Part shown: one piece after another, positions 18,776 to 63,398 of the stretch
How the letters are laid out: every line of letters starts with the position of its first letter
Position numbering within the stretch: the stretch's first letter is position 1
IMG/VR virus record: IMGVR_UViG_3300047321_000238
Span: 1 to 64,000 of that record
DNA length: 64,000 bases
Direction: 5' to 3' (one strand)
Translations under genes and position numbers: made by a program
Notes under the pieces: model-generated
What the model was told of the DNA's origin: nothing
Seen by the model: the letters and a program-made list of their open reading frames with translations, nothing else
Database searches by the model: none

Positions 18776-18849
18776 AATAAAAACCTTCTTTCTATTTTTA
18801 TTATTTCTAATATATTACTTTGGTAATGCTTAAAATACATATATTTAAT

Positions 18850-21800
18850 CTAAAATAATTTGTATAAAGCATTTTGAACTTTTTGATTTAAATTATATTG
18901 TGTTACTCTTCCGATGTTGGTTATTACTTGTAACCCTGAAGCAGAGGTAGGTTCTACGGATACATCTACGCTATGCAAGCCAACGCCATTTAATAATCCT
19001 AACATATCTCTTTGTAGAGCAAGAGGAGATGGACCATTATGAATATCTTTTATCTCTGGAGCTTTTTGGTATGCAGGTTCATTTTTATTTGAATCATACA
19101 TTCCAAAGTCAGATAATAACATACCTTCATTTTCTATAGTCTTCATCTTAATATTTTCTAAGTTCTCATCTGGCCTCCAACCTGCCCAAAACATATTAGG
19201 TAGATTGTGATTACTAAAGAAAGATTTATTAGATTTAGCTTTATCAACTTTTTCTCCCCATAAAACTTTTAAAGCTTTTTGTTTGTAAGGAGAAATCATC
19301 TTAAGTATCTTCTTCCTAGCTCTAGGATCTTTCTCTTTAGCAAACTCTAAGAAATAGTCTCTATCGTATTTAGGTAAAGCTCTAAGTACATCAGCCGCTG
19401 AAGAGTTATTTGTTAAACCATATATAGTTGTGTCTGCAGCTTTCTTATAAGCTAAAGCTGCTTTAGTATATTTGCCCATTTTATAATACTGTTCAGGAGT
19501 TTGTAACTTATATATTGCATTGCTAATATTGTAATCAAGTTGTTTCTTTACTTTAGCATCGATAGTATATTTATCTACTCTTTCTTTTTGCTTCTGTAAT
19601 CTTAATATTGCTTTCTGATTCTTTTTTTGATTGTATTCAAATTTGTTAACAATAGCTGCAATATTAACGCCGTCTTTTCTCTTAGATAGTCGTGCTGCTT
19701 TATTATATAAACCCATGTACTTCATGTATTCTAATCTGTCAAAGTACTCTTCTAATTCCCACTTCTTTTTAGTGTTCTTAGGAATGTACTTGCCAAACAT
19801 CTCATGATAGTTAAAGCTAGGATTTTTAATAGCTGATAATCCTACTCCGATAACTGCTCCAGCAATTGCCCCTTTTCCACCGCCAATTGTTTCTCCTTCT
19901 TTTTCTGCTATCTTTAATGCATTAGCTAAACCAGGAAACTTATTAGCTGGAACTTTTAATTGTCTAGCAACTGCGAATCCAGCCATACCGAAGTTAGCTG
20001 CACTTGCAATAGGATTATTTAAATGAGCAAATCCATAACCTAAAAATCCAATGGTTGCTGATATATTTGCACCATTCTTAGAATTCCAAACAGAAGCTTT
20101 AGATCCCCAATTCATTCTAGGAATTGCTCCAATAATTCCACCAGTTAAAGCATATGGATTAGTGAAAGCGAATAAAGCATGTGATGCCCATTTAGCTTTT
20201 CCTTCTAAACCTTTAGCTCTAGCTTGATTAGACCAGTACCAACTTGCTAAACCAAGAGCTTGAACTCCTAACCCTTTAGACCAACCAGTTTGTAATGTTG
20301 GCATAATGAATCCTTTAATAGGATGTCCCCATGTAGAATAGTTTGTTCCATATACTTGTTCTTTCTTATAAGATTCCATTGGATCATCTATTCTTAAATA
20401 CTTGTTATGAAGATAAGGAATTTGAGCATGAGCAATTCTTTCAAATATAGGGCCCATCATCTTATTAGAATCACCAGCAGCAAATAATTGATCAGCTAAA
20501 GTATCTTGACTATATTTCTCTTTAGCTTTCTTTTCTTCCCACATCTTCTTTGAGATACTTTCAGCTCCAACATTAACTAATGCACTAATAGATCCAGTAT
20601 TATCTCTTTGTCTAAATTTATTGTTTTCGTATTGTAATTCTACAATCATACCTGGCTTTAAGTATTCATGAATATAACTTTTCTTATTTTCATCATTAAG
20701 AGGCTTGACTCCAGCTAGAGTATATTGTTCATCACTACCGACTACTGTAAATCCTCCAGCATTAGCTACAGTGTTAATAACAGCGTGTCTAGTTTCCATC
20801 TTCTTTCCTGCAAATTGATAATTGTAGAATTTGTGATCGCTAGATTGAACCTTAACCCTCTTTTCTATTTGAGCCATTTCAGTTTTCATTTGAGGAGTTA
20901 ATGATGTTTCTTTCGCAATCTTTTTCCATGTCTTATACTCATCTGAACCAGGAGATATATCTGCTAAGATTTTGTATCTATCAAATGCACCATATCTTCC
21001 ATAACTATCTGGATGTAATTTATTTAAAGTTTCATATCCAGCACCAGGAAGTCTAGCTTCTCCTTTAGTTACTTTCGTATAAGGATCTCCTGTTTGATAT
21101 CTTTCAGGCATCCATAATGGCATAGTATTTCTAAGTGGATTAACTTGTTCGATATCATGGTTTTCATGTGGGAAGAAACGTCTAGCGATTTCCATGAAGT
21201 CTCCACCCATACCGCCTACGCCTTCATCCCAGAATCCTCGAACAAAAGAATTCATTTGTCCAGCTTTTTCTAATTGATATCCATGGCTAGCAGGTAACAT
21301 TGAATCAGCTAAGAATCCATACATACCTGATAATTGTTTAGCTGAGTACATTATGCTAGAAACATAATCACTCTTAGAACCTATTTCATTAACATGTATA
21401 TCATTAAGATATTTATCCTTAGCATTAGCAGCAGCCATAGTGAACGGTATATTTTGTAGTTTAGTATTTTCATTTATAACGCCGTTATCTTGGAATTCGT
21501 TAGCATTATTGCCTCTTGTTTTAATACCTTGATTAACTCCAGCTATTAATGACATTGCAGTTGAACCTGTTGTTAATCCACTAGTTACAAGTCTAGATAA
21601 GCCACTAGTTAACATGTCGCTAATAACTCCACTAGGTTCTTGATTTACATTAACATATTGAACTTGAGTGCCACTACCTCCACCTCTTATAACTGGAACA
21701 ACTGTATGATCAACTCCAGCTAGAGTTTCAGGATATCTTTCTCCATCAAATCCTGCAGATGTTACTTTACCTCTACTATTAAACTTAAGACTATATACAG

Positions 21801-24800
21801 ATTCACTCATTGAAGGCATAGACTTAGCTTTATAATCCATTGGTGTAAAGCCAGCTGGATCAACTCTAATAACTCTGTTTCCAGGTGCTTGTGCTTTGAT
21901 GTCGTTGTTTCTATTAGCTATTATTGATCTAACATCTAACAACGTACCGCTAAGTTCTGATTGATGCATTCTTCTTATAGGCTTTATTAATTGACCTATA
22001 GTAGGATTTAATACTGCTCCCCATGGAGTTTCTTCTTCGAATAACGAGCCTGTTACAGGATATGGTCTATCCCAATAATGTTTTTCTTCAAGCCAATAAG
22101 GATTAGCTAAATATCTTAATGGAGATAATGGATGTCGAAGAGTAGGAATTAAACTGTGTTTCCATTTCTCATCTTCTGAACCATATAGAGAAACATCTTT
22201 ATAATGACTATATGCTTGTCTTATTTTATTTGGTTCATAGTAAGATACTTTTCCTCCACGGAATTCAGAAGCAGAACCGAAACTCCACCATCTACCTTTT
22301 CTAACTGGATCTTCACCATTCTCTAAATAATCAAGATATTCATCTTTATCTTTATAGTCTCCAAGCCAGTAATTAGTAATAGGATTATACATTCTAGAAC
22401 GTCTATGATTGTCAGCCATTCCAGTTACTTGAGCAAATGTTTTAACTCCTACTCCAAAATTAGCTCTGAAGTTATAGTAGTCTTGAACAAAAGAAGTACC
22501 AGTTAAGTTTTCAGCTTCAAAGTTTAAATAACTAGCAGCATAACCTATTCCCATTATAGGCAGTATTCTTTTAAGTCCTAAGAATTTAATTTGATCTAGT
22601 ACACTTCCAGTGTTAGCTTTTGATGCACCTAATCCAAACTTCTCCATTGGAGTTATAAGTCTGTTAAGCATATGGTATGGTAAGAATGTAGCAGTAGTTA
22701 TATCTTTAACATTATTTCTTCCAGCAAAGAATTGTTTACCAAATCCCCTAGCTGCTGCAGCTGCTTTAGTAGAATCATTTAAGCTTTTAATAACATCAAG
22801 AGCTGATATAGATTTTCTCATTGTAACCCATTGATTATTTCTATGACCTTTTTGTATTGAGTTATCTTCTTCTATTACAACGTCTTTTCTCCAACTAGAA
22901 TTACTCTTTATGAAAGAATTGATTCCTGTTCTAAATTCGCTTAAGAACATATCTGTTTGAGCATTCTCAGAACTACCTTTTATTATATGACCAAAGTGTG
23001 ACATGATAGATTGTTTTTTTAGTCTATCTTGAACCTCATGTTGTGCTGAAGAGAATGATGCAGTTTCTTGTTGAAGAATACCCCAATTGAATATATTCTT
23101 CAGATTCTTTCTATCTGCTCCAGTGATATTCATCTTGCTTATTTTACTATAACTTATAGAATATCCTTGAACAAAATTTCCAATATAACTATTCTGATGT
23201 GCAGAATCTCTTAATAAAGCTTCTTTTACTACTTCTCTTTTAAGTAAATCGTTATATTTAAGAATGTTCATTCCATTCTTGTCACCAAGGTTTCCAATTT
23301 GAGCTATAGTATTTATTGAAGATATATTCTTCTTATACTTATTAACTAGAGACTTTAGATCACGATTCATAAATTCATCGTATTCATTTTCTATTAAATG
23401 GCCTGCAATATTATCATGGTTTAATGAGCTTAATACCATTCTTGCATGAGGGCCCAATGTCTTTTGTAATTCATTAATTGTATTTTTAGAAGGAGCGAAT
23501 GTTCTATGATTATATAAACGATTAACTTGATTTACATCTTTACCAAACTTCATCGCTGCTTCTTCATCTATCTTTGCATAAGTATCGTGACTAAACAATC
23601 TTTTAGGTACATTACCAACCCAACTCGAACCTTCACTAAACTTACTAAAGAATCCTCTGAACCTTTCAAGTTCATTTGTTCCTGTTGTATTAAAGTCTAA
23701 CCATTTAAGAGTCTTGTTGTCTTGAACTTTAGTGTCAAAGTTACCTTGTATTCTATTGTTCATTACATTGAAAGAACCATGTCTTCCAGACATAAGATAT
23801 AAATTGTCAGCTTCTTTTACATGCACTAAGTCACCATTATTATATTGGAATATTTTATTTCCTATTTTAAAATGGTCGAATCCTAACATTCCACTTTGTG
23901 ATCCAGTTAGATTTCCTAATACTGAATCAAAAGAACCTTGTGGTAAGTAGAAGAAATCTGGTGCTTTCTTATTGTCTATAAAACTTCTAGCAGAAAATAG
24001 TTTACCAGCGATTGTATCAGCAAACTCTTCTTTAACTTTGTAGCTTAAATCATTAATAGCTTTTGTAGAATAAAGTTCTCCATTTTTATTTACTCTTAGA
24101 GTAGCATTATCGATAACCATATCATTAAATCTATTATCATGTTGAACTAAAGCATGTAATGTATCAATAATATTATCATGACTTCCTTCAAACAGTTCAG
24201 AGTTCTTTATACTTGTTGTTTTGTTATCTACTCCGCTTAACAAGTCTCCAACAGTGGCTGCTCTATCTAAAGTATTTTTAAAGAATGTATCTTTCTTATT
24301 AGTATACTTATCTATAAGCTCTTCTTTATACGTATTTAATAATTGACCTTTAAATTTATCTTGATACTCAGTACTAAACTCTTCTTCTAATCTTTTAGAG
24401 TTATTTAAAGCTTGTTCCATAACATTCATGATGTCATCTTTATGCTCTTCTAAGATAGAACCATTAATCCTATCTTCAAATTCTGATCTGACCAAACTAG
24501 TTCCTTCGGCAGATTCTTGTAGATAAGTACTCTTTTTATTTAAACTCTCATCAACCATTTTGGTTAACTCTGAAAAGAACTCTCCTGAATTTGCTTTTGC
24601 ATTTTCATTTAGTTTTATATTATCAGTAAGAGATGTCATTACATGATTCTTTTGAACAGCATCAAACATTTCATCAGCTAAGTATGTTCCATCAGTTTTT
24701 AGTTTATTATAATGAAGTGCAGAAGATAATAATCCTCTACTATAATCAAGCTCTATACCTGTTTCTCTTCTAGTTGCATTCCAAGTGCTATCATCATTTA

Positions 24801-25035
24801 AAACATTCTTCTTAATGATACCACCTATTGCTTCATAGTCTAAATCTTTAAACGCCTTAGTAGATAAATCATCAGATACTTTGCTTATAGTTGTGCCTAA
24901 GTCTCCTATTGCTTTAGATAGGTATTTCATATTACCAGAATCTTTTAAGGCAAATGCACCTGCAGTAATGCCAGCTACAGCTAAACCTATATTTTTCAAT
25001 CTACTTGATCTTTCATCGTTGTCTGCATATTTCAA
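18850..25035 (-). CDS. Giant virion protein (about 2060 aa), positionally the tape-measure or an ejected protein; degenerate SNase-like domain
   Basis: Follows the two tail-chaperone genes; several Gly/Ala hydrophobic segments; likely TTG start at 25035 behind GGAGGTGA (ORF track starts at 25050). Confidence 0.55.
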   Translation of the reverse strand: MKYADNDERSSRLKNIGLAVAGITAGAFALKDSGNMKYLSKAIGDLGTTISKVSDDLSTKAFKDLDYEAIGGIIKKNVLNDDSTWNATRRETGIELDYSRGLLSSALHYNKLKTDGTYLADEMFDAVQKNHVMTSLTDNIKLNENAKANSGEFFSELTKMVDESLNKKSTYLQESAEGTSLVRSEFEDRINGSILEEHKDDIMNVMEQALNNSKRLEEEFSTEYQDKFKGQLLNTYKEELIDKYTNKKDTFFKNTLDRAATVGDLLSGVDNKTTSIKNSELFEGSHDNIIDTLHALVQHDNRFNDMVIDNATLRVNKNGELYSTKAINDLSYKVKEEFADTIAGKLFSARSFIDNKKAPDFFYLPQGSFDSVLGNLTGSQSGMLGFDHFKIGNKIFQYNNGDLVHVKEADNLYLMSGRHGSFNVMNNRIQGNFDTKVQDNKTLKWLDFNTTGTNELERFRGFFSKFSEGSSWVGNVPKRLFSHDTYAKIDEEAAMKFGKDVNQVNRLYNHRTFAPSKNTINELQKTLGPHARMVLSSLNHDNIAGHLIENEYDEFMNRDLKSLVNKYKKNISSINTIAQIGNLGDKNGMNILKYNDLLKREVVKEALLRDSAHQNSYIGNFVQGYSISYSKISKMNITGADRKNLKNIFNWGILQQETASFSSAQHEVQDRLKKQSIMSHFGHIIKGSSENAQTDMFLSEFRTGINSFIKSNSSWRKDVVIEEDNSIQKGHRNNQWVTMRKSISALDVIKSLNDSTKAAAAARGFGKQFFAGRNNVKDITTATFLPYHMLNRLITPMEKFGLGASKANTGSVLDQIKFLGLKRILPIMGIGYAASYLNFEAENLTGTSFVQDYYNFRANFGVGVKTFAQVTGMADNHRRSRMYNPITNYWLGDYKDKDEYLDYLENGEDPVRKGRWWSFGSASEFRGGKVSYYEPNKIRQAYSHYKDVSLYGSEDEKWKHSLIPTLRHPLSPLRYLANPYWLEEKHYWDRPYPVTGSLFEEETPWGAVLNPTIGQLIKPIRRMHQSELSGTLLDVRSIIANRNNDIKAQAPGNRVIRVDPAGFTPMDYKAKSMPSMSESVYSLKFNSRGKVTSAGFDGERYPETLAGVDHTVVPVIRGGGSGTQVQYVNVNQEPSGVISDMLTSGLSRLVTSGLTTGSTAMSLIAGVNQGIKTRGNNANEFQDNGVINENTKLQNIPFTMAAANAKDKYLNDIHVNEIGSKSDYVSSIMYSAKQLSGMYGFLADSMLPASHGYQLEKAGQMNSFVRGFWDEGVGGMGGDFMEIARRFFPHENHDIEQVNPLRNTMPLWMPERYQTGDPYTKVTKGEARLPGAGYETLNKLHPDSYGRYGAFDRYKILADISPGSDEYKTWKKIAKETSLTPQMKTEMAQIEKRVKVQSSDHKFYNYQFAGKKMETRHAVINTVANAGGFTVVGSDEQYTLAGVKPLNDENKKSYIHEYLKPGMIVELQYENNKFRQRDNTGSISALVNVGAESISKKMWEEKKAKEKYSQDTLADQLFAAGDSNKMMGPIFERIAHAQIPYLHNKYLRIDDPMESYKKEQVYGTNYSTWGHPIKGFIMPTLQTGWSKGLGVQALGLASWYWSNQARAKGLEGKAKWASHALFAFTNPYALTGGIIGAIPRMNWGSKASVWNSKNGANISATIGFLGYGFAHLNNPIASAANFGMAGFAVARQLKVPANKFPGLANALKIAEKEGETIGGGKGAIAGAVIGVGLSAIKNPSFNYHEMFGKYIPKNTKKKWELEEYFDRLEYMKYMGLYNKAARLSKRKDGVNIAAIVNKFEYNQKKNQKAILRLQKQKERVDKYTIDAKVKKQLDYNISNAIYKLQTPEQYYKMGKYTKAALAYKKAADTTIYGLTNNSSAADVLRALPKYDRDYFLEFAKEKDPRARKKILKMISPYKQKALKVLWGEKVDKAKSNKSFFSNHNLPNMFWAGWRPDENLENIKMKTIENEGMLLSDFGMYDSNKNEPAYQKAPEIKDIHNGPSPLALQRDMLGLLNGVGLHSVDVSVEPTSASGLQVITNIGRVTQYNLNQKVQNALYKLF

Positions 25036-25109
25036 TAATTTCACCTCCAAAAAAAAGATAATAATAAAAGCTTGTTAACTTCTATTACTATCTCTTTTAA
25101 TCTCTATAA

Positions 25110-38093: not shown

Positions 38094-39308
38094 TTATATT
38101 GTTTTTGTATTTACTGTGATAGTTGGTGGTACTGGATAAGATGGAGCAACTGCAATTCCCTTAGCAACTGTTATAGCTAGTCCATTATTCAAGATTCCGA
38201 TTCCATATCTTTCTTTACACTTAAGGTTTCTGATATCTTTTTCAGGATCAGTCCAGTTCTCAGTAGTTAATCCTTCTTTTTGAACGATAACTCCTACTTC
38301 AGATCTGTCTAAGCAATACATATCAAACTTCTTGTTTTGTTTGTCGAAACTAACAAATGGAGAGAAGTTCATAGTTAAAGGCATAGGTAATCTGTTTTGA
38401 ACTTGTTCTGGTTTCATTATAAGCTTTTGTCCATTACCATTAGCTTGAAGTCCAGCAAATCCTGGAGTTCCTTGTATTTGGTTGTTGAAGTGTACATCGT
38501 TACCGCCGAATGCTCCGTAGCTCATTCCGTTTCCGATCATACTGTTTCTAGCAAATACTACCCAAGTTAAAGGATGCATGATTACGTCTGTAGGAACAAA
38601 ACCGTTAGACATTACTGTTAAAGCCATATCTAAGAAATCTTCAACTGATAATGTATCGTTGTAATCTCCGTTTTCGTTTCTTCCTGTAGTTCCTGCTTCA
38701 GGTACTTGAGCTCTGATGTTGTTATTGAAAACTTGATGACAGTTAGATGAGAATGTATTGAATATCCATTCTTCTTTATATCTAGCCATAGCTTTACCCA
38801 TTTTTCTAACATTAAGACCTAAGATATCCCATGAGCTATCTGTAACAGCTTCTTCAGTTATAGCAACTCTAGTACCGATTTTCTTAACTCTGATTTCTAG
38901 AGTTGAGTTTTCGATAGTATTCATATCTACAACTTGTTCAGCGTATCTTCCGCCTTCTCCTACTTCGTGTGCATATAATTCACCAACAACTGGGATTACA
39001 TATACTGCTGAGTTTCCTCCTTCAACATTGATTGTTGAGAAAAAGTTTGTACCTAAATATTCAGGTTCTGCAGCTTCTCTTAATTTACCTTCGATTATTT
39101 TAGGAATTAATTTAATTGTATCAGTAGTAGTTAATGCTTCTTGTAAAGATGCTCTACCCTTTTGGAAATCTCCACCTAAATTTCTAACCATTTTTTCCAT
39201 AAGATCAATTGTCTTTGTTTCGATGCTAGGTTTCTTTCCTTCAGCAAGTTCAGCGTTAACAGTAGATCTCATAGTTTCTATTTTATTTAAAGTTTCTGTT
39301 AAATTCAT
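38094..39308 (-). CDS. Major capsid protein (HK97 fold)
   Basis: 404 aa; EVGEGG..Y, KKIGTRVAITEEAV, PTDVIMHPLTW and KERYGIGIL; follows protease and decoration genes; strongly biased codons. Confidence 0.85.
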   Translation of the reverse strand: MNLTETLNKIETMRSTVNAELAEGKKPSIETKTIDLMEKMVRNLGGDFQKGRASLQEALTTTDTIKLIPKIIEGKLREAAEPEYLGTNFFSTINVEGGNSAVYVIPVVGELYAHEVGEGGRYAEQVVDMNTIENSTLEIRVKKIGTRVAITEEAVTDSSWDILGLNVRKMGKAMARYKEEWIFNTFSSNCHQVFNNNIRAQVPEAGTTGRNENGDYNDTLSVEDFLDMALTVMSNGFVPTDVIMHPLTWVVFARNSMIGNGMSYGAFGGNDVHFNNQIQGTPGFAGLQANGNGQKLIMKPEQVQNRLPMPLTMNFSPFVSFDKQNKKFDMYCLDRSEVGVIVQKEGLTTENWTDPEKDIRNLKCKERYGIGILNNGLAITVAKGIAVAPSYPVPPTITVNTKTI

Positions 39309-39421
39309 CTTAATTTTTCCTCCTCATTATCTAATCATTTATATTTGTGGAAGTACACTCTCATGCACTTCTCACAACTATATTACTAATCAAATTTATT
39401 TTATTACTATTCTTATTGAAA

Positions 39422-52861: not shown

Positions 52862-53140
52862 GTTAAATTCCCCCTTGTTCTTTTCTTTTCTCTATATATT
52901 ACTATCTATATCTCATATATTAATAACGTCTTGCCATATATTACTTATTCTAAATATTCTATTTAATTTCCAAATATTACCTTATATAGAGATGAAAAAT
53001 TTATAAAAAATAATTTTAAAAAATAGAAAAGTTGAACTTTTAAAAAAAGCCTATAGGGAAAAACGAAAAATATAAAAAATTTCTAGGGGAAGTAGGTATA
53101 TATATATATGTATATATGTTGAAAATGTAGCCCCATGGGT
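52862..53140. promoter_or_regulatory. Divergent late/early control region with three TATTAC(T/C) copies, A-tracts and a TA run
   Basis: Strand switch; TATTACT at 52897 and 52939, TATTACC at 52975; A5-A7 tracts 52995-53080; (TA)n 53097-53117. Confidence 0.5.
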
Positions 53141-56663: not shown

Positions 56664-56724
56664 TAGATTATATACGTACTAAAGACAAATAAACTCCACC
56701 AGACCTTAGCAAGCAAATTCGCTT

Positions 56725-57156
56725 GAAAGGAGGTGATGCCTGGCAAGATATACGAACTTGGGTAGGCTGCTTGAACATGTTGTGCTTTTGATGCAGCAAC
56801 AGTTGGTTGGGTGGGACAGAAACACAACAATGGGGGATGAAATAAACAGATTTCACTAACGAAAGGAAGAAACAAACAGAATGATATTTTCAAAACTAAA
56901 GACGCTAAAGGAAGACTCGGCAAATTACCAACAACTATTCAGCCTGGAGGTTGATGAATTAAATTTTCTTCAATCTCTAGAAAGGAGGTTGATAATCTAA
57001 ATTTTTATCAGCCACCGAAAAGGAGGTTGGTAAGGATTATGACGTAACTTTACACATATCATTTAAGGAGGTTGATACTCACACATGGACTAATATTAAA
57101 GGAGATGATGCTTGGCAAGAAATAGAAATGACTATAAATATGAAAGGAGGTGATGC
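56725..57156 (+). repeat. Array of 7 (A)AAGGAGGT(T)GAT motifs; candidate ncRNA or leader
   Basis: GGAG(G/A) cores at 56729, 56946, 56984, 57022, 57067, 57101 and 57146 with no long ORF. Confidence 0.75.
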
Positions 57157-57298
57157 TAAATCTAAGACTAATAAGACTACTGAAGGATTGTTCGTAATCT
57201 TTCAATGCATGGGCCTATAGTATTTGAACTTAGGCACTATGAGTGACAGGGATAATGGGGTACAAATAAAAATATATGATGAAAAGGATGGATACAAA

Positions 57299-60200
57299 AT
57301 GATAAACACAAACACATTAACTAATGGAACTACTACAACAAACACAAATGAAGGGATGGATGTACAAATGGTAAATATCAATGTAACAAACGTAGCTAAA
57401 ATAGTAGGGGTATCAAATGAAGAAGTTGTAGCATTAGCTATAAGATTAGGTTTAGAAGTTTCAACATCAGGTAAGAAAATAAACAATGTTATTTCTACTG
57501 CAATTGTAGTTGAAGCTGTTAATGATTTAATAGCTAAAGATGAAGTTGCAGTTACAAATATAGTAAACAATAATGAAGGGATGGATGTAAAAATGGTTAA
57601 CAAGATTAAAGAGGAAATAATGGAAATGGTTTATTCTGAAATGAACAAGGAAATAGCTAAACAAGAAATTAGAGACGAATACTTAAACAGAGTTGCAACT
57701 GTTGCAGCTATAGTTGATGAATCTAATAAAAAGTACAAAAGAAATACTTTAAGCAAAGTAGAATTAGTTGATTATGTAGTAGCTAACAATATCGAAGTTA
57801 ATGACAAAGAATTAAGAGCACTATATTCTCAATTAAATGCTGCAAGAGATAAAGAAGCTAAATCAGAATTAGTTCACAAGATCATAGATCAAATGAATGA
57901 AGGTAAATTCACTTATAAAATGTATGCAACTGCTAATAAGTACAAGCACCTTTTATCTGAAGATGATACAATTACTTTTGAATTAGCATTAGATGTAGCT
58001 CTTAATAAGGCTTCTATGAAGAACTACAAGAACCTATTAGCTGTTAAAAGATGGACTAAAGATATCACTGTTGCATTATTAAGAAGAGTTGTTTGCTATA
58101 CTGGTAATCAATATGAAACAGAAGTAGCTCCTCAAATGTTCAGTTCTCTAATCAGAGCTTGTGATGTTACAGTTAAAGATGTTGCAGATTCTAAGATGAC
58201 TTTAAATGGATACACTACTGATGAGTTACTATTATTCTCATTCGATAAAGATGTATTAAAATTAACTGGAAATAATGACAGAGAAGTATTAGCTAAAAAA
58301 GATTACCTAGCTAAAGTATTCTATATCATTGCTGGATTATCTGAACAAAAGGTTTATATAGTTGAAAGAAAATCAGGTATTGCAGATGTTTATACTAATA
58401 TCAACAAGATCAAATTAAATGAAGGTGAAGTTATAAAACAATATGAATTCTTAGGAATAACTCCATCTGGTTTAAGATCTGGAACTATGACATTAGCTAT
58501 CACTAAAGAAATTCACGCTGATGGAACTGTTGTTGAAAGAGATAGAAGAGTTGAAATCATGGACAAAGCTTCTGATAATTCATTCAGCATTAACTTTATC
58601 GTAGGTGCGAATGAAAATGGACAAGCTATATTCAAAGATTGCGAATCAGTACTTGATGCATTTAAAGAAATGTCTAGAATGATGTTATGTGCTACATCTT
58701 CAAAAGTGCTTGGTAAATTAGACTCTTATGTTGTATTAGATAATTTATCTTTTGGTGCAGGATATAATGCTAAAGATACTAACTCTCCTGCTAAAATGGG
58801 TGAAGAAAATTTCGTAGATTGTCAAGATACTACTGATGGTTTAGGATTAATATCTAATGATATGTTAAAAGAAAATCTTCAAGCTATGAACATTCCATGC
58901 TCAATTAAAGACTTATTAGGAATGACATTCCAAGCTAGAGGTGGCGGATTAAAGATTGCTGCAATGTCAAGATCTAAAGAAGCTATTAGACTAGAAGCAA
59001 AAGCATCATTAAGCAGAGGAGCATCTGTATTAAGAGCTGTATTCAAAGGACAAGAAGTTAAAGCTAAAGATCTAACTGATGAAATGTTAGATAACATGCA
59101 AGGATTGTTTGATGGTAATGGTATGAAGTTAATCGATCACAATGCTGAAATCGAATTAGTAATGCTTAAGAAAGCTTATTCATCTGACTCTAAATTATCT
59201 GATGTTGTTAATATTATAATGATGGTTAATGATGAACAAGCTACTACAGCATTATTATCTTCTAAAATAAAAAGTCAAATCTTAGACAAATTAAAAGACA
59301 TTGGTATAAACGTAGATTACAATGCAGAAACTGATGAAGTTATCAGCGTAAAATGTGATCTTAAGAACTTAAAAAGAATCAACAATGACAGTCAAACAGT
59401 TGAATGGATGTTTAGATCTCTTCCTGAAACTATGATTGCATTAGCTCCTGGTGTTCAAAAGACAAACTTTAATAGCTTATTGAAAGGTTTAGCTAACCTA
59501 ATCAACGAGCTTAATGTTGAAGTTAATTGTGAATATACTGTTGTTCAATCAGATCCAGCAGTTAGATTTGGTGTAAGAATAATAAAAGAAGATGAAGTAT
59601 TCTGCCCAAGCTTAATAGAAGTAAATAAAGTATCAGGTGTTAGACATCCAGTATCAAACTTATTTGCTGTTTCTACATTCAAGACACTTACTCTAAAAAC
59701 TATCTTAAAGAGAATTGATAAATTGAATGTATCTCTTGAAGTTAAAAACATGTTATTTGAATTCTACAAAGGAGTAGAAGGTTATGCTATAATACCAGCA
59801 TCTCACTACTACATGGAAAAACATGATGGAATGGATTTCGATATCGATGCTATGCAATTTTTCTTAGATCAAGAAGTAGTAGCAATACTTGAAAAGACTT
59901 CTGATATAGGAACAATAATTGATAGATCTATTGATGAAGAAATGGATTGTTCTATTAAGGAATCTAATGATGACCATGCTATCAAAGCTTTCTACAAAGA
60001 TATTAACAAGAAAGATTTCCACCCTATAGCTTATGATGTAAAAGTATCTGAAGAAAAGATAGCACCAGTTAAAGCATTAAAAGGAATGGTTATGCCTAAG
60101 AAGATTAATGTTGCTTCTACTGAAGATAATCATTACAAGAAAAATGCAAATGGAAGATACTCATTAGACTTCTCTTCAGTTGCTATGATGGTATTAGATT

Positions 60201-62242
60201 ATTTCTTAAACCCAATAGATTCAGTTGGTATCATGGCAACAAACTTCTATAATAATGCTAAAATACTTATGGCATTAAAATCAATTAACACTGAAATCAC
60301 TAAAGAAATGAAACAATTCATAGTTCAAGGAATGAGAACAATGTTTTCTTGTAGTGGTTTAAAGAAGTATTCTTCTCCAATCAGAAAGAACAATGACGGA
60401 ACAAAATTTAACTACAACGATAGAAATAAAGTTGTTCTATGCAAAGATGTTTGTCACAAAATAATCAAAACATTTATCAACTCTAAAGGAGATTTTGCAG
60501 ATTGTATTCAATTCTTAATTGATGTATGTATTTGTAGTAGATATCCAGCTGAAACTTCTATTGATAGTGCTAAGAAAATGTATAAAGTTATAAACATGTT
60601 TGCATTATCTGGTTGTATTAAAGCTATGGGTTGTAAAAATGCTGTTAAATTCTTAAACTTTGATCCATATATGTTAGATGACCAAGGTAACTCTATTGAA
60701 GAAGTAGAAACTACAAAAGCATTCACTAACATTATTGACATCTTTAATGCAGCTCAACCAAAAAATGCTCTACAATATTCAACAAACAATTTCTTTGGAT
60801 TAAAATTAATAAAAGAAGAAATGTCATGTGTTGGTTGGGAAGATGCTGATAAGGCTATGTTAGCTTTCAATACAGAGAAAAAAGTAGCAGGTATTAAAGA
60901 TCCTACTTATCTATTAAAAGAAAGACTAATGAACTTTGCTAATTCAGTTATAGTATTTGCAGCTAAAGAATTAGAAGCATTTGTTAAATCAGATGAAGCT
61001 AATGCTATCAGAAAAGAATTCAAAGGTTTCTACAATTCAGAAGATAATTATTTCAGAGTTGATAAAGTAGTATCTAACATCGTTGGTACTTATATCACAT
61101 TAACTGAATCAATCAAAGCTTCAGAAAATGATGAAATAGATGATATAACTGCAAAGAAATATCTTAAGACAAATGCATTACAAGCTCTAATGAACACAGC
61201 TAAACTTTCATTTAAAACAGCTAGAAAACCAGTATCTGATGAAGAAATTGGAGCAGGTGTGTTCTATTATATGATTACTTCTTTTGAAAAAGAAAAAGAC
61301 AATGTATGTACTTCAGTTAACTCTAAGATTCTTGATATCTTCCAAAAAGAGATATTAGCATTCTTAAAATCTAAAGGATATGATATGCTTGCTGCTGAAG
61401 AAATATTATATGCTGTTAATCCTGTAACTAACAGACAAGTTAAATTAAATACAACAGAAGGATTAACATGTTCTGCATATAATGGTCATGGTACAATTGA
61501 ATTAGAAGATGGTTCAATCTATTTATTAACTCTAAAGAATAAGAAAGCATCTTTTGATAATGGTACTATTTCTATAGTAGATGATAAGTATGTTGTTGTT
61601 CAACAAAGAAAAACTTTAGAAGAAAATATACAATCAGGATTCTACTTTGGTGCTAAAATGGAAAAAGGAATATTCAACAAAGCTAATCTTCTAATGCAAG
61701 ATATTAAAAAGACTACTGGTGATTACAATGAATACAAAGCAGCATTAGCAGAAATAAATCCTAATAACATTTTAGCTGAGACACAATATGATGAAATTCT
61801 TTTCAGAACAAGAAGAGAAATGGACGAAAGAGGAAAATCATATACAGCTAATCTTTTAATTGGTATGAAAGATGATCAAGAATGTTTAATAGCTGAGTTA
61901 TACCTTAATACAATCGTTGCTCAATTATTACAAACTGCTGAGTTATCTGAAAGCAATGTAAGATTATTCATGACTGAAAATAGTTGTACTGTTAACATTA
62001 TTGAAGACTCTCTATTAGCTGAAGTTGAATCAGTTAGCACTCCTGACACTATAAGTGATTCATTTGGATTAGATGACTTAGAAGGATTCAGTAACTCAAT
62101 AATAGATTATTCTTGTTATGATGTTACTCCAGTTCAAGAAAACTATGATGAAAAACAATTCGTTGCAATTACAACAAACTACGATATTCCTCAAGTTGAC
62201 ATGTGCAATGACGAAAACTATTTAAATGGTTTAACTCAATAA
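57299..62242 (+). CDS. YonO/cRdRP-like single-subunit DNA-dependent RNA polymerase (about 1647 aa)
   Basis: TDGLGLIS, FQARGGGLK, VRHP and DGMDFDID in the order found in the cRdRP/YonO family; likely ATG 57299 behind GAAAAGGA (ORF track starts 57224). Confidence 0.8.
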   Translation: MINTNTLTNGTTTTNTNEGMDVQMVNINVTNVAKIVGVSNEEVVALAIRLGLEVSTSGKKINNVISTAIVVEAVNDLIAKDEVAVTNIVNNNEGMDVKMVNKIKEEIMEMVYSEMNKEIAKQEIRDEYLNRVATVAAIVDESNKKYKRNTLSKVELVDYVVANNIEVNDKELRALYSQLNAARDKEAKSELVHKIIDQMNEGKFTYKMYATANKYKHLLSEDDTITFELALDVALNKASMKNYKNLLAVKRWTKDITVALLRRVVCYTGNQYETEVAPQMFSSLIRACDVTVKDVADSKMTLNGYTTDELLLFSFDKDVLKLTGNNDREVLAKKDYLAKVFYIIAGLSEQKVYIVERKSGIADVYTNINKIKLNEGEVIKQYEFLGITPSGLRSGTMTLAITKEIHADGTVVERDRRVEIMDKASDNSFSINFIVGANENGQAIFKDCESVLDAFKEMSRMMLCATSSKVLGKLDSYVVLDNLSFGAGYNAKDTNSPAKMGEENFVDCQDTTDGLGLISNDMLKENLQAMNIPCSIKDLLGMTFQARGGGLKIAAMSRSKEAIRLEAKASLSRGASVLRAVFKGQEVKAKDLTDEMLDNMQGLFDGNGMKLIDHNAEIELVMLKKAYSSDSKLSDVVNIIMMVNDEQATTALLSSKIKSQILDKLKDIGINVDYNAETDEVISVKCDLKNLKRINNDSQTVEWMFRSLPETMIALAPGVQKTNFNSLLKGLANLINELNVEVNCEYTVVQSDPAVRFGVRIIKEDEVFCPSLIEVNKVSGVRHPVSNLFAVSTFKTLTLKTILKRIDKLNVSLEVKNMLFEFYKGVEGYAIIPASHYYMEKHDGMDFDIDAMQFFLDQEVVAILEKTSDIGTIIDRSIDEEMDCSIKESNDDHAIKAFYKDINKKDFHPIAYDVKVSEEKIAPVKALKGMVMPKKINVASTEDNHYKKNANGRYSLDFSSVAMMVLDYFLNPIDSVGIMATNFYNNAKILMALKSINTEITKEMKQFIVQGMRTMFSCSGLKKYSSPIRKNNDGTKFNYNDRNKVVLCKDVCHKIIKTFINSKGDFADCIQFLIDVCICSRYPAETSIDSAKKMYKVINMFALSGCIKAMGCKNAVKFLNFDPYMLDDQGNSIEEVETTKAFTNIIDIFNAAQPKNALQYSTNNFFGLKLIKEEMSCVGWEDADKAMLAFNTEKKVAGIKDPTYLLKERLMNFANSVIVFAAKELEAFVKSDEANAIRKEFKGFYNSEDNYFRVDKVVSNIVGTYITLTESIKASENDEIDDITAKKYLKTNALQALMNTAKLSFKTARKPVSDEEIGAGVFYYMITSFEKEKDNVCTSVNSKILDIFQKEILAFLKSKGYDMLAAEEILYAVNPVTNRQVKLNTTEGLTCSAYNGHGTIELEDGSIYLLTLKNKKASFDNGTISIVDDKYVVVQQRKTLEENIQSGFYFGAKMEKGIFNKANLLMQDIKKTTGDYNEYKAALAEINPNNILAETQYDEILFRTRREMDERGKSYTANLLIGMKDDQECLIAELYLNTIVAQLLQTAELSESNVRLFMTENSCTVNIIEDSLLAEVESVSTPDTISDSFGLDDLEGFSNSIIDYSCYDVTPVQENYDEKQFVAITTNYDIPQVDMCNDENYLNGLTQ

Positions 62243-62252
62243 TATCAACATT

Positions 62253-62280
62253 AGAGTCTCATTAATTTGAGGCTCTTTTT
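62253..62280 (+). terminator. Intrinsic terminator after RNAP gene
   Basis: agagtctca-ttaatt-tgaggctct followed by TTTT. Confidence 0.75.
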
Positions 62281-62306
62281 ATTTTAAATTTGAAAGGATG
62301 ATTATA

Positions 62307-63398
62307 ATGAAAACAATTAATAACAAACAATTAGAAACAGGAAAGAAAATAGTAAATCAATTAGGAGTTAACAAAACTGCTATAGCACTAACTCATTATA
62401 ATGTAGAAAAGAACAATATTGATATCAGAATGTTTTTGTACTCAGATGAAGACATTACAATATATACAACTGGTAGATTGTTTTTAGGAACATATAAAAA
62501 GGAAGATAAAAAGTTCTCATTCGATCCTGCTACTAAACTACCTTATGTTGTAGGATGCAATAACATTAAGACTCGTAGAGAAGTTAAGGATGCTATTAAG
62601 AAAGTATTATCTACTCATGCAGATGTATTAAAAATGAGTAATGGATACAAAAACTTAATTAATGATGTAGAGGATGTTTTACTTTATGTTATCAAGAGTG
62701 GAATTATTAAAGGCAGCTACTTACCACTTGAGGCACAACTAAAACATAATTGGATCATGAATCCAGACACAATAATTGTAGAGGGTGAGTCAGTAGCTAA
62801 ACATGAAATAGCAGTAACAACAGATACTAATACAAAAACAGAAGGAGAAGTCAAAATGAATATAATGAGTGCGGCACATAAACTAAGAAAAGAAATGGAA
62901 ATAGAAGATAAAGAATATGCATCTTACAGCTATAAACTTAAAATGAAGATTGCATTAAAGTATGCATGGGATACATGTCATATTAATAAAGTAGTAGCTA
63001 TTAAAGAAGTAGCTATTACTGTAGATAAAGTGATAAACATAAATACACGTAGACCAGAGCCAACAGCTAAGGATGAAGTTATGGCAAGTAAGCTTGAACC
63101 ATTAACAGCTAAGTGCGACAATGGCAAGAAAAGAATCAAAGGAGAAACTTATATTGTATCCACACCAGGACACGTTAATATAGAAGATCACATTGGAACA
63201 GTGATTAAGGCTTTTGATATATCCACTCAAATATTAGGCAGAAAAACATTAGCTGAGTTAAATGTGAAATTCACTGAAAGAAAGTTTGCAGAGAGCAGAT
63301 TTTACAGAGAGAATGCACATAAGTTAATTATTGTTACTAGCCATAAAGATGAATATGAACAAATTAAAAACCCAAGAGGATTTATACTTGTTAAATAG
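62307..63398 (+). CDS. Hypothetical protein, possibly a two-part fusion
   Basis: GAAAGGA RBS; internal GAAGGAG-N8-ATG at 62841-62858. Confidence 0.65.
   Translation: MKTINNKQLETGKKIVNQLGVNKTAIALTHYNVEKNNIDIRMFLYSDEDITIYTTGRLFLGTYKKEDKKFSFDPATKLPYVVGCNNIKTRREVKDAIKKVLSTHADVLKMSNGYKNLINDVEDVLLYVIKSGIIKGSYLPLEAQLKHNWIMNPDTIIVEGESVAKHEIAVTTDTNTKTEGEVKMNIMSAAHKLRKEMEIEDKEYASYSYKLKMKIALKYAWDTCHINKVVAIKEVAITVDKVININTRRPEPTAKDEVMASKLEPLTAKCDNGKKRIKGETYIVSTPGHVNIEDHIGTVIKAFDISTQILGRKTLAELNVKFTERKFAESRFYRENAHKLIIVTSHKDEYEQIKNPRGFILVK

What the first reader, a model, noticed from the sequence alone, without database searches (positions are those of the whole stretch)
57299..62242. Second phage RNAP: YonO/cRdRP-like enzyme with a DFDID catalytic loop
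Seen: TDGLGLIS (58832-58855), FQARGGGLK (58928-58954), RHP (59642-59650) and DGMDFDID (DFDID at 59834-59848). Established: eukaryotic RNAi RdRPs and SPbeta YonO share DGxGxIS, QxRxxGxK, RxP and DxDGD, and YonO transcribes phage late genes. The DFDID variant is the form reported for crAss-like phage RNAPs. Inference: a non-virion RNAP made early that drives the late module.
Basis: partly seen in the sequence, partly recalled or inferred. Interest (0 to 1): 0.72.

Follow-up and report, generated by a model that had tools for sequence, protein, structure and literature searches.

The report
QDE-1-like RNA polymerase of jumbo phage
This 1,647-residue gene of an uncultured 248-kb soil phage encodes a very divergent single-chain RNA polymerase with the same fold as the RNA-silencing polymerases of eukaryotes. 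The phage also carries a giant polymerase-like tail-module protein and its own sigma factor, so it probably transcribes its genome with several polymerases in turn.

Summary
All four motifs sit at the stated coordinates in one 1,647-aa ORF (57299-62242, +). They are invariant in 22 metagenomic homologues and never appear in order in 20,000 shuffles.

Sequence libraries (Pfam, PHROGs, NCBIfam, PDB, 50,697 cultured phages) find nothing. A confident AlphaFold model (pLDDT 85) matches only two-barrel RNA polymerases:
- QDE-1/RDR2: Foldseek E 3e-11, VIA Z 14-15.
- Thermus-phage non-virion RNAP: Z 11.
- crAss-like gp66: Z 8.

A profile bridge (hhalign 99 %) links the family to Pfam RdRP. So it is a new, sharply bounded family (about 33 clusters) within the known phage/RNAi single-subunit RNAP clade. 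Its metal loop is DFDID (Ile in 45 of 47 members).

The host genome is a complete 248-kb jumbo myovirus related to Bacillota phages. A 2,867-aa tail-module protein carries a second, beta'-like RxP...DxDGD module, so "second RNAP" holds.

The gene's conserved position, about the 10th gene of the non-structural arm with its own terminator, suggests an enzyme that is not packaged and is made early. "Drives the late module" is untested. The phage encodes a sigma factor, and in phage P23-45 host RNAP reads the late genes. AGTAATA alone is not enriched, but the longer TAGTAATATA is.

The parts
57299..62242 (+). CDS of the 1,647-aa single-chain two-barrel RNA polymerase (the open frame begins at TTG 57224; ATG 57299 is the preferred start)
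   Evidence: P0001 identical, 1,647 aa; GC 0.299 vs genome 0.305
58046..61645 (+). Catalytic core that was modelled (aa 250-1449): both double-psi beta-barrels, the connector and the helical C-terminal part
   Evidence: AlphaFold model pLDDT 84.8, pTM 0.81; QDE-1/RDR2 matches
58832..58855 (+). TDGLGLIS motif (D513-G514 invariant), first (beta-type) barrel
   Evidence: inside the only PF05183 sub-threshold hit in the genome (58796-58972)
58928..58954 (+). FQARGGGLK motif (Q545, R547, G548, K552 invariant), the basic residue of the beta-type barrel
59642..59650 (+). RHP motif (R782, H783, P784 invariant), the universal R-x-P of the beta'-type barrel
   Evidence: universal residues listed in PMC2919709
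59819..59857 (+). Metal-binding loop KHDGMDFDIDAMQ (D846, D848, D850; Ile849 replaces the canonical Gly)
   Evidence: DxDID in 45 of 47 family members
62253..62286 (+). Intrinsic-terminator-like hairpin plus T-tract, 11 nt after the stop codon; the only such site in 52.3-64 kb
56664..57298 (+). Long non-coding leader upstream of the gene. It holds an array of about 7 AAGGAGGT(T)GAT units (56724-57156) and a conserved element, TTAGGCACTATGAGTGACA (57229-57247)
   Evidence: a gap of 175-500 bp is conserved in relatives; no Rfam match
62298..63398 (+). Conserved downstream neighbour (366 aa; 322-332 aa in relatives), function unknown
   Evidence: synteny; no PHROG or Atlas lead
9327..17930 (-). 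Giant 2,867-aa tail-module ORF with a beta'-like polymerase module in its C-terminal part: candidate virion RNAP (the 'first' RNAP)
   Evidence: 51 homologues; invariant R2278/P2280 and D2316/D2318/D2320; fold matches RNAP beta' and QDE-1; remote homologue is WH1 gp095, annotated 'virion structural protein'
10971..11099 (-). RFP ... MDHDGD segment of the giant ORF (RFP 11091-11099; DHDGD 10971-10985)
   Evidence: alignment blocks
18850..25050 (-). 2,066-aa ORF directly upstream of the giant RNAP-like gene; tape-measure protein by position (inference)
   Evidence: same gene order as Bacillus phage WH1: sheath, tail chaperones, three giant genes; no family hit
52895..52946 (-). Three TAGTAATATA-like units at 21-nt spacing upstream of the first gene of the structural arm; further copies at 39379-39409, 25081-25090 and 18811-18820. 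Candidate late promoter element

Best explanation
The ORF encodes an active, single-chain, Mg-dependent 'two-barrel' RNA polymerase of the phage/RNAi clade (the clade of QDE-1, RDR2, YonO, crAss gp66 and P23-45 gp64).

Proposed catalysis: the beta-type barrel supplies D513 and K552. The beta'-type barrel supplies R782/P784 and the metal triad D846/D848/D850, in a DFDID loop with Ile where most polymerases have Gly.

Proposed role: it is not a virion component. It is made soon after infection from the start of the non-structural (+) arm as its own transcription unit. It then acts as the second polymerase in a relay:
(i) a 2,867-aa tail-module protein with a beta'-like DxDGD module is ejected with the DNA and reads the first genes, including this one;
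(ii) this enzyme reads a later class;
(iii) host RNAP redirected by the phage sigma factor reads another class.

Which class belongs to this enzyme is open. I lean slightly (about 0.45) to the middle genes of the + arm, with the late arm read by sigma plus host RNAP as in P23-45.

Shown here: motifs, their conservation, predicted fold, genome context, co-occurrence of the two proteins. Inferred: activity, DNA template, non-packaging, timing, the relay.
For: Identity:
- Model pLDDT 84.8.
- Foldseek PDB ranks 1-21 are all QDE-1 or RDR2 entries (E 2.6e-11 to 6.5e-8), then crAss phi14:2 gp66 (E 3.6e-6).
- The independent VIA search gives RDR2 Z 15.2, QDE-1 Z 14.0 (670 residues), P74 gp62 nvRNAP Z 11.2, P23-45 gp96 Z 8.1, gp66 Z 8.0, then beta' subunits at Z about 7.
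- The BFVD top hits and the AFDB top 30 are RdRP-named or unnamed.
- The four motifs are invariant and correspond to universal two-barrel residues (PMC2919709).
- Sequence bridge: family profile vs P0112 gives E 1e-18 and hhalign 99 % over 449 columns through all motifs. P0112 matches PF05183 at 38.9 bits, above the 23.8 cut-off.
- A DFDID loop is catalytically competent in gp66, where D-to-A mutants are dead.

Role:
- The gene is about the 10th of the + arm, divergent from the terminase/structural arm. The same position, upstream gap and downstream neighbour recur in relatives of 32-36 % identity.
- A terminator follows 11 nt after the stop codon, and there is no sigma-70-like site in the leader.
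- The giant DxDGD protein is in the same genome and on the same contig in a distant relative. It lies after the presumptive tape measure, as in WH1 where its homologue is annotated as a virion structural protein.
- Sigma factor with regions 2 and 4.
- Two distinct upstream motif classes.
- Precedents: P23-45 relay and YonO.
Against: - There is no direct experimental or expression data. The only runs holding the sequence are DNA metagenomes.
- The fold is a prediction from 23 sequences.
- No curated family reaches its threshold directly (PF05183 14.5 bits against 23.8). There is no significant hhalign match to YonO, gp66 or 0305phi8-36 gp99.
- The second universal Lys is only K/R/Q-like in the family, and I could not measure 3-D clustering of the catalytic residues.
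- In the gp66 crystal the DFDID loop is in a non-catalytic, self-inhibited conformation.
- For the giant protein only the beta'-like half was demonstrated (Z 8-9), and virion packaging is inferred from gene order and from an annotation in another phage.
- The promoter-like motifs are short, and TAGTAATATA contains a sigma-70-type -10 (TAATAT).
Confidence: 0.7

Rival explanations
1. One reading: this non-virion RNAP is the dedicated late-gene polymerase. It transcribes the structural (-) arm from TAGTAATATA-type promoters, as YonO does in SPbeta and as the non-virion RNAPs of phiKZ- and AR9-type jumbo phages are thought to do.
For: YonO is required for 37 late SPbeta genes. In group 1 jumbo phages one RNAP is packaged and the other is made later. 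TAGTAATATA is intergenic-enriched (5 of 8 exact copies lie in the 8 % of the genome that is intergenic). It sits 18-71 nt upstream of late genes, including the major capsid gene and the first gene of the - arm.
Against: The genome encodes a sigma-70-family factor, which implies that host RNAP serves some class. The motif contains TAATAT and lacks a -35, which from my own knowledge resembles sigma-dependent late promoters of the T4 type. In the only characterised phage with two single-chain two-barrel RNAPs, the late genes are read by host RNAP. Unlike yonO, the gene is divergent from the late operon and not at its head. AGTAATA as written is not enriched.
Confidence: 0.4
2. It is a virion-packaged, injected RNAP like crAss-like gp66, with which it shares the DFDID loop, and it transcribes the earliest genes.
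For: The DFD[I/V]D loop is characteristic of crAss-like virion RNAPs. There is a fold match to 6vr4 (E 3.6e-6, Z 8.0).
Against: The gene lies in the non-structural arm, about 10 kb and a strand switch away from the terminase, in all relatives examined. The structural arm already holds a giant DxDGD protein in the position of ejected tail proteins. hhalign to gp66 aligns only the loop. Non-glycine loops are widespread among remote relatives. 0305phi8-36 gp99, a related enzyme in the nearest cultured clade, lacks the virion mass-spectrometry note that gp116 carries.
Confidence: 0.1
3. It is not a gene-expression polymerase. Instead it makes RNA for another purpose: replication primers on single-stranded DNA, or RNA-templated or small regulatory or anti-defence RNAs, as QDE-1/RDR enzymes do.
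For: The closest structures are RNAi RdRPs, which copy RNA and ssDNA. An RNase H gene lies five genes downstream in relatives. Some homologues have an N-terminal Rho_N nucleic-acid-binding module.
Against: All characterised phage members of this clade (YonO, gp66, gp64, gp96) are DNA-dependent transcription enzymes. The gene's conserved place at the head of the early arm, as a separate unit, fits a transcription switch.
Confidence: 0.1
4. It is a catalytically dead relic or structural protein that keeps the fold only.
For: Ile replaces the canonical Gly in the metal loop. The gp66 crystal shows a DFDID loop that cannot bind Mg as crystallised.
Against: All three Asp, R-x-P, D-G and Q-x-R...K are invariant across homologues of 26-57 % identity. 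gp66 with DFDID is active.
Confidence: 0.03

Closest known systems
Eukaryotic RNAi polymerases QDE-1 (Neurospora, PDB 2J7N/7Y7P) and RDR2 (plants, 7W84/7RQS); Pfam RdRP PF05183
   Same: Best structural match (Foldseek E 2.6e-11; VIA Z 14-15, up to 670 aligned residues). Single chain with both barrels. Same order of DGxGxIS, QxRxxGxK, RxP and DxDxD.
   Different: Only 9-13 % identity. PF05183 scores 14.5 bits, below its 23.8 cut-off. DFDID replaces DxDGD. The protein carries about 250 extra N-terminal and 200 extra C-terminal residues. It is encoded by a phage, so a role in transcription rather than silencing is expected.
Non-virion RNAP gp64 of Thermus phage P23-45 (P74-26 gp62, PDB 8F5M; P32 gp64, 8F72), paired with the tape-measure-fused virion RNAP gp96 (8H2M)
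   Same: Closest characterised phage enzyme by structure (Z 11.2, 424 of 592 residues). It is a non-virion single-chain two-barrel RNAP in a genome that also has a tail-module RNAP. The giant RNAP-like gene here lies next to the presumptive tape measure.
   Different: The P23-45 enzymes are about 600 aa, their host is Thermus, and the phage is a siphovirus of about 84 kb (size from my own knowledge). There the two enzymes are paralogues. Here the giant protein looks more beta'-like (DxDGD), the target more QDE-1-like, and no sequence similarity between them was found. The virion enzyme here is a separate gene and is not fused to the tape measure.
Virion RNAP gp66 of crAss-like phage phi14:2 (PDB 6VR4)
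   Same: Identical DFDID metal loop with the context G-x-DFDID-x-M. Two-barrel fold match (E 3.6e-6, Z 8.0).
   Different: gp66 has 2,180 aa, is packaged, and is encoded in the block of giant virion genes of a podovirus-like phage. hhalign is not significant beyond the loop. The target lies in the non-structural arm.
YonO of Bacillus prophage SPbeta, and gp99 of Bacillus jumbo phage 0305phi8-36 (YonO-like/RdRP-like)
   Same: Single-chain two-barrel RNAPs of Bacillota phages. gp99 belongs to the cultured jumbo-phage clade nearest to this genome by terminase (29 %) and is likewise divergent from the structural genes. YonO transcribes late genes.
   Different: No significant sequence or profile similarity. 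gp99 matches PF05183 at 69 bits while the target does not. yonO heads the late operon and is co-oriented with it. YonO has 839 aa.
Virion plus non-virion multisubunit RNAPs of phiKZ- and AR9-type jumbo phages
   Same: A jumbo myovirus with two phage-encoded two-barrel polymerases, one presumed packaged and one made after infection.
   Different: Those enzymes are split beta/beta' multisubunit complexes that Pfam detects. Here PF00623 and PF00562 find nothing, and both candidates are single chains. This phage also keeps a sigma factor.

Membership tests
Two-barrel (double-psi beta-barrel) RNA polymerase superfamily | Two DPBB domains forming the active site, with connector and helical C-terminal elements | tested here: met
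   Predicted structure (pLDDT 84.8) matches only two-barrel RNAPs at the top of PDB, BFVD and AFDB.
Two-barrel (double-psi beta-barrel) RNA polymerase superfamily | Universal catalytic residues on the beta' side: R-x-P and the D-x-D-x-D triad (PMC2919709) | tested here: met
   R782, P784, D846, D848 and D850 are invariant in 23 sequences.
Two-barrel (double-psi beta-barrel) RNA polymerase superfamily | Universal residues on the beta side: one Asp and two Lys | tested here: inconclusive
   D513 and K552 are invariant. The candidate second basic residue (K560) is K/R in 21 of 23 sequences and Q in 2. Equivalence was assigned from motif order, not from a residue-level structural alignment.
Two-barrel (double-psi beta-barrel) RNA polymerase superfamily | Mg-dependent template-directed RNA synthesis | not testable with these tools
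   Needs purified protein.
Pfam RdRP PF05183 (cellular RdRPs and YonO-like relatives) | Score above the curated gathering threshold | tested here: not met
   14.5 bits against 23.8, although it is the only hit in the genome and falls exactly on the DG...QxR...K segment. A transitive link exists through P0112.
Pfam RdRP PF05183 (cellular RdRPs and YonO-like relatives) | DxDGD metal loop | tested here: not met
   DFDID; Ile in 45 of 47 family members.
crAss-like virion RNAP (gp66 type) | DFD[I/V]D catalytic loop | tested here: met
crAss-like virion RNAP (gp66 type) | Detectable sequence or profile homology to gp66 orthologues | tested here: not met
   hhalign aligns 34 columns around the loop only, probability 1 %. 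No PHROG hit.
crAss-like virion RNAP (gp66 type) | Encoded in the block of giant virion genes, and packaged | tested here: not met
   Gene context: the non-structural arm, in all relatives examined. Packaging itself cannot be tested here.
YonO family in the narrow sense (SPbeta) | Sequence or profile homology to YonO | tested here: not met
   hhalign probability 0.5 %.
YonO family in the narrow sense (SPbeta) | Transcribes the late operon, and the gene heads that operon | tested here: inconclusive
   The gene is divergent from the late arm rather than at its head. The function could not be tested.
P23-45-type relay (virion RNAP then non-virion RNAP then host RNAP) | Two single-chain two-barrel RNAP genes in one genome, one of them in the tail module | tested here: inconclusive
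   The giant ORF shows a beta'-like barrel with invariant RxP and DxDGD, next to the presumptive tape measure. Its beta-type barrel was not demonstrated, because the modelled part began at residue 1668.
P23-45-type relay (virion RNAP then non-virion RNAP then host RNAP) | Temporal order of use and absence of the second enzyme from virions | not testable with these tools
   No RNA runs hold the sequence, and there is no cultured member.

The most novel reading that the evidence does not exclude
A whole clade of uncultured ~250-kb Bacillota myoviruses runs a three-tier transcription relay built from two dissimilar single-chain two-barrel polymerases plus a phage sigma factor. The first polymerase is an ejected 2,867-aa tail-module protein that joins an exonuclease-like N-terminus to a beta'-like DxDGD module. 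The second is this QDE-1-like non-virion enzyme with a fixed non-glycine (DFDID) metal loop. That would be a jumbo-phage counterpart of the phiKZ virion/non-virion scheme, made of single-chain enzymes from both major clades of two-barrel RNAPs in one genome.
Probability: 0.3. Interest if true: 0.75.

Novelty: new member of a known kind. Interest (0 to 1): 0.55.

Why it matters
Single-chain two-barrel RNA polymerases are the presumed relatives of the ancestor of cellular RNAPs and the likely source of the eukaryotic RNA-silencing polymerases. Only four phage examples have been characterised: YonO, crAss gp66, and P23-45 gp64 and gp96.

This family adds a large (about 1,400-1,700 aa), sharply bounded lineage that no curated profile detects. 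Its predicted structure matches QDE-1/RDR2 better than it matches any solved phage RNAP. It also shows that the non-glycine DFDID metal loop is not confined to packaged crAss enzymes.

Together with the giant beta'-like tail-module protein and a phage sigma factor, it gives a concrete, testable model of how a non-phiKZ jumbo phage of Bacillota organises transcription. A survey of 224 jumbo phages found single-chain enzymes of this kind in only two.

Tried and rejected
- Direct sequence annotation failed. Pfam, PHROGs and NCBIfam gave only noise. phmmer and a profile search against PDB sequences gave nothing. tblastn against 50,697 phage records gave nothing, even for the core at E <= 10.
- The family profile found no paralogue in the genome and no orthologue in Moorella phage MTATph1 or Bacillus phages WH1, 0305phi8-36 and KLEB27-3.
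- hhalign of the family against gp66, YonO and 0305phi8-36 gp99 was not significant. These were single-sequence templates, so this is weak negative evidence.
- PF05183 registered in the B. subtilis control genome but not in the SPbeta record, so I do not claim the control hit is YonO.
- The bridge protein P0112 has no tblastn match in cultured phages.
- Multisubunit beta/beta' Pfam models are absent from the genome. The T7-like RNAP search had an uninformative control.
- AGTAATA as a promoter word is rejected: it is not enriched.
- The conserved leader element is not a promoter class, because it is unique in the genome.
- Rfam finds nothing in 52.3-57.4 kb.
- The 366-aa downstream neighbour gave no lead.
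- Pfam does not confirm the exonuclease-like N-terminus of the giant ORF.
- Co-occurrence could not be searched on Logan contigs with the genome search, so it was shown through the look-up of encoding contigs instead.
- No RNA sequencing run holds the region. Complex prediction was not used because its controls would not discriminate non-specific binding of nucleic acid or Mg.
Full report
OBSERVATION. All lie in one frame of one long ORF, 57224-62242 on the + strand. The ATG at 57299 gives 1,647 aa and is the start of the identical protein in the public collection (P0001). In 20,000 composition-matched shuffles of the protein, DGxGxIS appeared in 0.1 %, QxRxxGxK in 0.4 %, RxP in 50 % and DxDxD in 42 %. 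All four in order never appeared. The first two patterns occur in no other gene of the genome. The pentapeptide DFDID also occurs in an unrelated 689-aa ORF, so it is the context that counts.

FAMILY. Curated libraries and direct searches are blank: Pfam, PHROGs and NCBIfam, PDB sequences and tblastn against 50,697 cultured-phage records. The large metagenomic protein collection holds 22 unnamed homologues of 1,393-1,704 aa and 26-57 % identity. Across them, D513-G514, Q545/R547/G548/K552, R782-H783-P784 and K841-H-D-G-M-D-x-D-I-D850 are invariant. An exhaustive profile search of 1.84 billion representatives gives about 33 full-length clusters with E below 1e-190. After a large gap come about 165 remote relatives (E 1e-23 to 1e-3) that match only the catalytic core, from the DG motif to the metal loop. 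The family is therefore small and sharply bounded.

FOLD. An AlphaFold model of residues 250-1449, built on the 23-sequence alignment, is confident (mean pLDDT 84.8, pTM 0.81).
- Foldseek against the PDB: ranks 1-21 are all QDE-1 or RDR2 entries (E 2.6e-11 to 6.5e-8). Rank 22 is the crAss-like phi14:2 virion RNAP 6VR4 (E 3.6e-6). The Thermus-phage non-virion RNAPs follow.
- VIA-align, which does not depend on Foldseek: maize RDR2 Z 15.2, QDE-1 Z 14.0 (670 residues aligned), P74 gp62 Z 11.2, P23-45 gp96 Z 8.1, gp66 Z 8.0. After these, at Z about 7, largest-subunit chains of cellular, poxvirus, ASFV and phiKZ RNAPs appear among unrelated short helical matches.
- BFVD and the AFDB fold clusters give the same answer.

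SEQUENCE BRIDGE AND MEMBERSHIP. The Pfam RdRP model PF05183 gives one sub-threshold hit in all six frames of the 248-kb genome. It falls exactly on the DG...QxR...K segment (14.5 bits; cut-off 23.8). One remote relative, P0112, matches the family profile at E 1e-18. By hhalign that match has 99 % probability over 449 columns running through all four motifs. P0112 itself matches PF05183 above threshold (38.9 bits). This places the family inside the RdRP/YonO-like superfamily by sequence as well as by structure.

Narrower memberships fail. hhalign against SPbeta YonO, 0305phi8-36 gp99 and phi14:2 gp66 is not significant, and with gp66 only the G-x-DFDID-x-M loop aligns. A review lists eight residues common to all two-barrel RNAPs: three Asp, Arg and Pro on the beta' side, and one Asp and two Lys on the beta side (PMC2919709). 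Seven candidates are invariant here. The candidate second basic residue is K/R in 21 of 23 sequences.

THE METAL LOOP. DFDID is the published catalytic motif of phi14:2 gp66, and changing any of its Asp residues to Ala abolishes activity. In crAss-like phages the fourth residue is Ile or Val, and in the crystal the loop is in a self-inhibited conformation. In this family the fourth residue is Ile in 45 of 47 members. Among the remote relatives it is G in 56, F in 25 and Y in 13, with a few S, M, W, T, A and I. The Ile is thus a trait of this family. Non-glycine loops are common in the phage superfamily and do not indicate specific crAss ancestry.

GENOME CONTEXT. The window is bases 1-64000 of a complete 247,883-bp virus record with direct terminal repeats. 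GC is 30.5 %, and the gene has the same composition. The sequence comes from a rhizosphere metagenome. The genome encodes a tail sheath, portal, major capsid protein and terminase. The terminase is closest to Moorella phage MTATph1 (43 %), to the Bacillus jumbo phages WH1, Edson and KLEB27-3 (33-36 %) and to 0305phi8-36 (29 %). One relative lies on a contig binned to a Lachnospiraceae MAG. The host is therefore probably a member of the Bacillota.

Genes form two arms. The structural arm is on the - strand (38-52861, continuing over the ends to 185519-247781). The non-structural arm of about 200 genes is on the + strand (53371-185420). The polymerase gene is about the 10th gene of the + arm. 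In relatives of 32-36 % identity it has the same position. It is preceded by a non-coding gap of 175-500 bp (about 640 bp here) and followed by a gene of about 330 aa. The only terminator-like hairpin in 52.3-64 kb lies 11 nt after its stop codon, and the leader has no sigma-70-like site on the + strand. These features fit a separately controlled gene that is expressed early and is not a virion component. No expression data exist.

A SECOND POLYMERASE-LIKE PROTEIN AND A SIGMA FACTOR. The 2,867-aa ORF at 9327-17930 (-) has 51 homologues of 2,788-3,058 aa, many on contigs of about 250 kb. In these, T-R-[FY]-P (R2278, P2280) and M-x-D-[HF]-D-G-D (D2316, D2318, D2320) are invariant. A model of residues 1668-2867 (pLDDT 77) matches RNA polymerases only. 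All 50 listed Foldseek rows are largest-subunit (beta'-type) chains, including AR9 and phiKZ non-virion RNAPs (E about 2e-5). VIA ranks QDE-1 (Z 9.0), RDR2 (8.4) and Mycobacterium beta' (8.0) first. Only the beta'-like half was shown.

A distant relative of the target (P0022) and a relative of the giant protein (P0067) lie on the same 121,626-bp contig. The giant family's profile hits gp095 of Bacillus phage WH1 on the RxP...DxDGD segment (E 2e-9). In WH1 the gene order is sheath, tail chaperones, then three giant 'virion structural proteins', and gp095 is the middle one. The window has the same order. By position the first giant gene (18850-25050) would be the tape measure, which is an inference. 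That arrangement recalls P23-45, where the virion RNAP is fused to the tape measure.

The genome has no multisubunit beta or beta' genes detectable by Pfam. It does encode a sigma-70-family protein with regions 2 and 4, at about 132.4-133.6 kb of the + arm.

PROMOTER-LIKE WORDS. AGTAATA is not enriched in the window (33 found, 28.7 +/- 5 expected). De novo k-mer counting in upstream regions gives a longer word, TAGTAATATA, for the - arm. There are 8 exact copies in the genome, and 5 of them lie in the 8.3 % that is intergenic. All intergenic copies point at a gene start 18-71 nt downstream. The targets include the major capsid gene, the first gene of the - arm (three units at 21-nt spacing) and a few distal + arm genes. 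A different word, AATATGTA, is intergenic in 8 of 31 copies, 7 of them upstream of + arm genes between 64 and 106 kb. The first 10 kb of the + arm, which holds the polymerase gene, has neither word. This suggests at least three promoter classes. Assigning them to polymerases is inference, and TAGTAATATA contains a -10-like TAATAT.

MECHANISM AND RIVALS. I conclude, at about 0.9, that the protein is a single-chain two-barrel RNA polymerase. At about 0.7 I conclude that it is a non-virion enzyme made early, acting as the second polymerase of a relay started by the ejected giant protein. Which class it reads cannot be decided here.

Against it: the phage sigma factor, the -10-like nature of the late-arm word, and the P23-45 precedent. 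In P23-45 the virion RNAP reads pre-early genes including the non-virion RNAP gene, the non-virion RNAP reads early and some middle genes, and host RNAP reads the late genes.

I put the two assignments at about 0.45 (middle genes) and 0.40 (late genes). Packaging like gp66, a non-transcriptional role such as priming or small-RNA synthesis, and an inactive relic are minor rivals.

NOVELTY. Single-chain YonO-like enzymes in Bacillota phages have been known since 2003-2010, including one in jumbo phage 0305phi8-36. A 2021 survey of 224 jumbo phages found them in only two. Twenty-three families of two-barrel RNAPs have been compared. This is therefore a new, very divergent member of a known kind. 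I could not check whether it falls into one of those 23 families. The system-level picture is not described in the papers I could search: two dissimilar single-chain two-barrel proteins plus a sigma factor in a clade of about 250-kb myoviruses with no cultured member.

LIMITS. All functional statements rest on predicted structures, conservation and gene order. Single-sequence hhalign templates are insensitive. The simple ORF map used for the upstream-motif statistics is my own.

Noticed in passing
window 56724-57156: The 640-bp non-coding leader of the polymerase gene holds about 7 Shine-Dalgarno-like units, AAGGAGGT(T)GAT, at 38-45-nt spacing. Six of the 10 such units in the whole genome lie here. 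Two are followed by mini-ORFs (MPGKIYELG*, MLGKK*). Relatives have 1-3 similar units, including the same AAAGGAGGTGATGCC. There is no Rfam match. Function unknown.
   Followed up: partly
window 57229-57247; L005:9927-9945; L010:5917-5935 (approx.): A ~19-nt element (TTAGGCACTATGAGTGACA here) is conserved 50-90 nt upstream of the polymerase start in three lineages and is unique in this genome. In L005 its internal ATG meets a stop after 4 codons, so it is non-coding. It may be a gene-specific promoter or operator.
   Followed up: partly
window 16600-17930 (-), aa 160-440 of the 2,867-aa ORF: The giant RNAP-like protein has invariant D167, E169, H427 and D432 in contexts (YDLETLGG ... HNxxxFD ... 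AHNAxxD) that look like a DEDDh 3'-5' exonuclease. Pfam does not detect it.
   Followed up: partly
window 38-9283 (-): The 3,081-aa ORF after the RNAP-like giant matches PHROG 20474 ('endolysin', 546 bits, aa 1856-2436) and DUF6046. It is probably an ejected tail-associated lysin. The three-giant-gene block is conserved in relatives and in Bacillus phage WH1.
   Followed up: partly
L003:1309-2556 (genome 132408-133655, outside the window): A 415-aa sigma-70-family protein (region 2 at 29 bits, region 4 at 45 bits) with about 190 extra C-terminal residues. It lies directly after a protein made of gyrase-A C-terminal beta-propeller repeats. A weak second region-2 hit lies at genome 148096-148239.
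   Followed up: partly
window 52895-52946 and 39379-39409 (-): The late-arm word TAGTAATATA occurs as tandem copies exactly 21 nt apart: three upstream of the first - arm gene and two upstream of the major capsid gene.
   Followed up: partly
window 64095 and genome 72884-106368 (mostly outside the window): A second upstream word, AATATGTA(T/C)A, lies 27-105 nt before seven + arm genes between 64 and 106 kb. It may define a separate promoter class.
   Followed up: partly
window 27467-30190 (-) and 38094-39308 (-): Two genes hit 'major head protein' PHROGs: the 404-aa ORF, and the N-terminal 180 aa of a 907-aa ORF that lies beside the sheath gene. The second may be mis-named in PHROGs or may be a decoration or tail protein.
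   Followed up: no
P0018:1-140, P0021:1-140; window 57368-57466: Some family members start with a genuine Rho_N (HeH/SAP-like) nucleic-acid-binding module (32-34 bits). The window's protein has only a sub-threshold IF2_N-like helix pair at aa 24-56, and its N-terminal 250 aa are poorly conserved.
   Followed up: partly
L005:16901-17344; L010:12852-13295: In relatives, an RNase H gene lies five genes downstream of the polymerase gene. I did not check whether the window's genome has it just beyond 64 kb.
   Followed up: no
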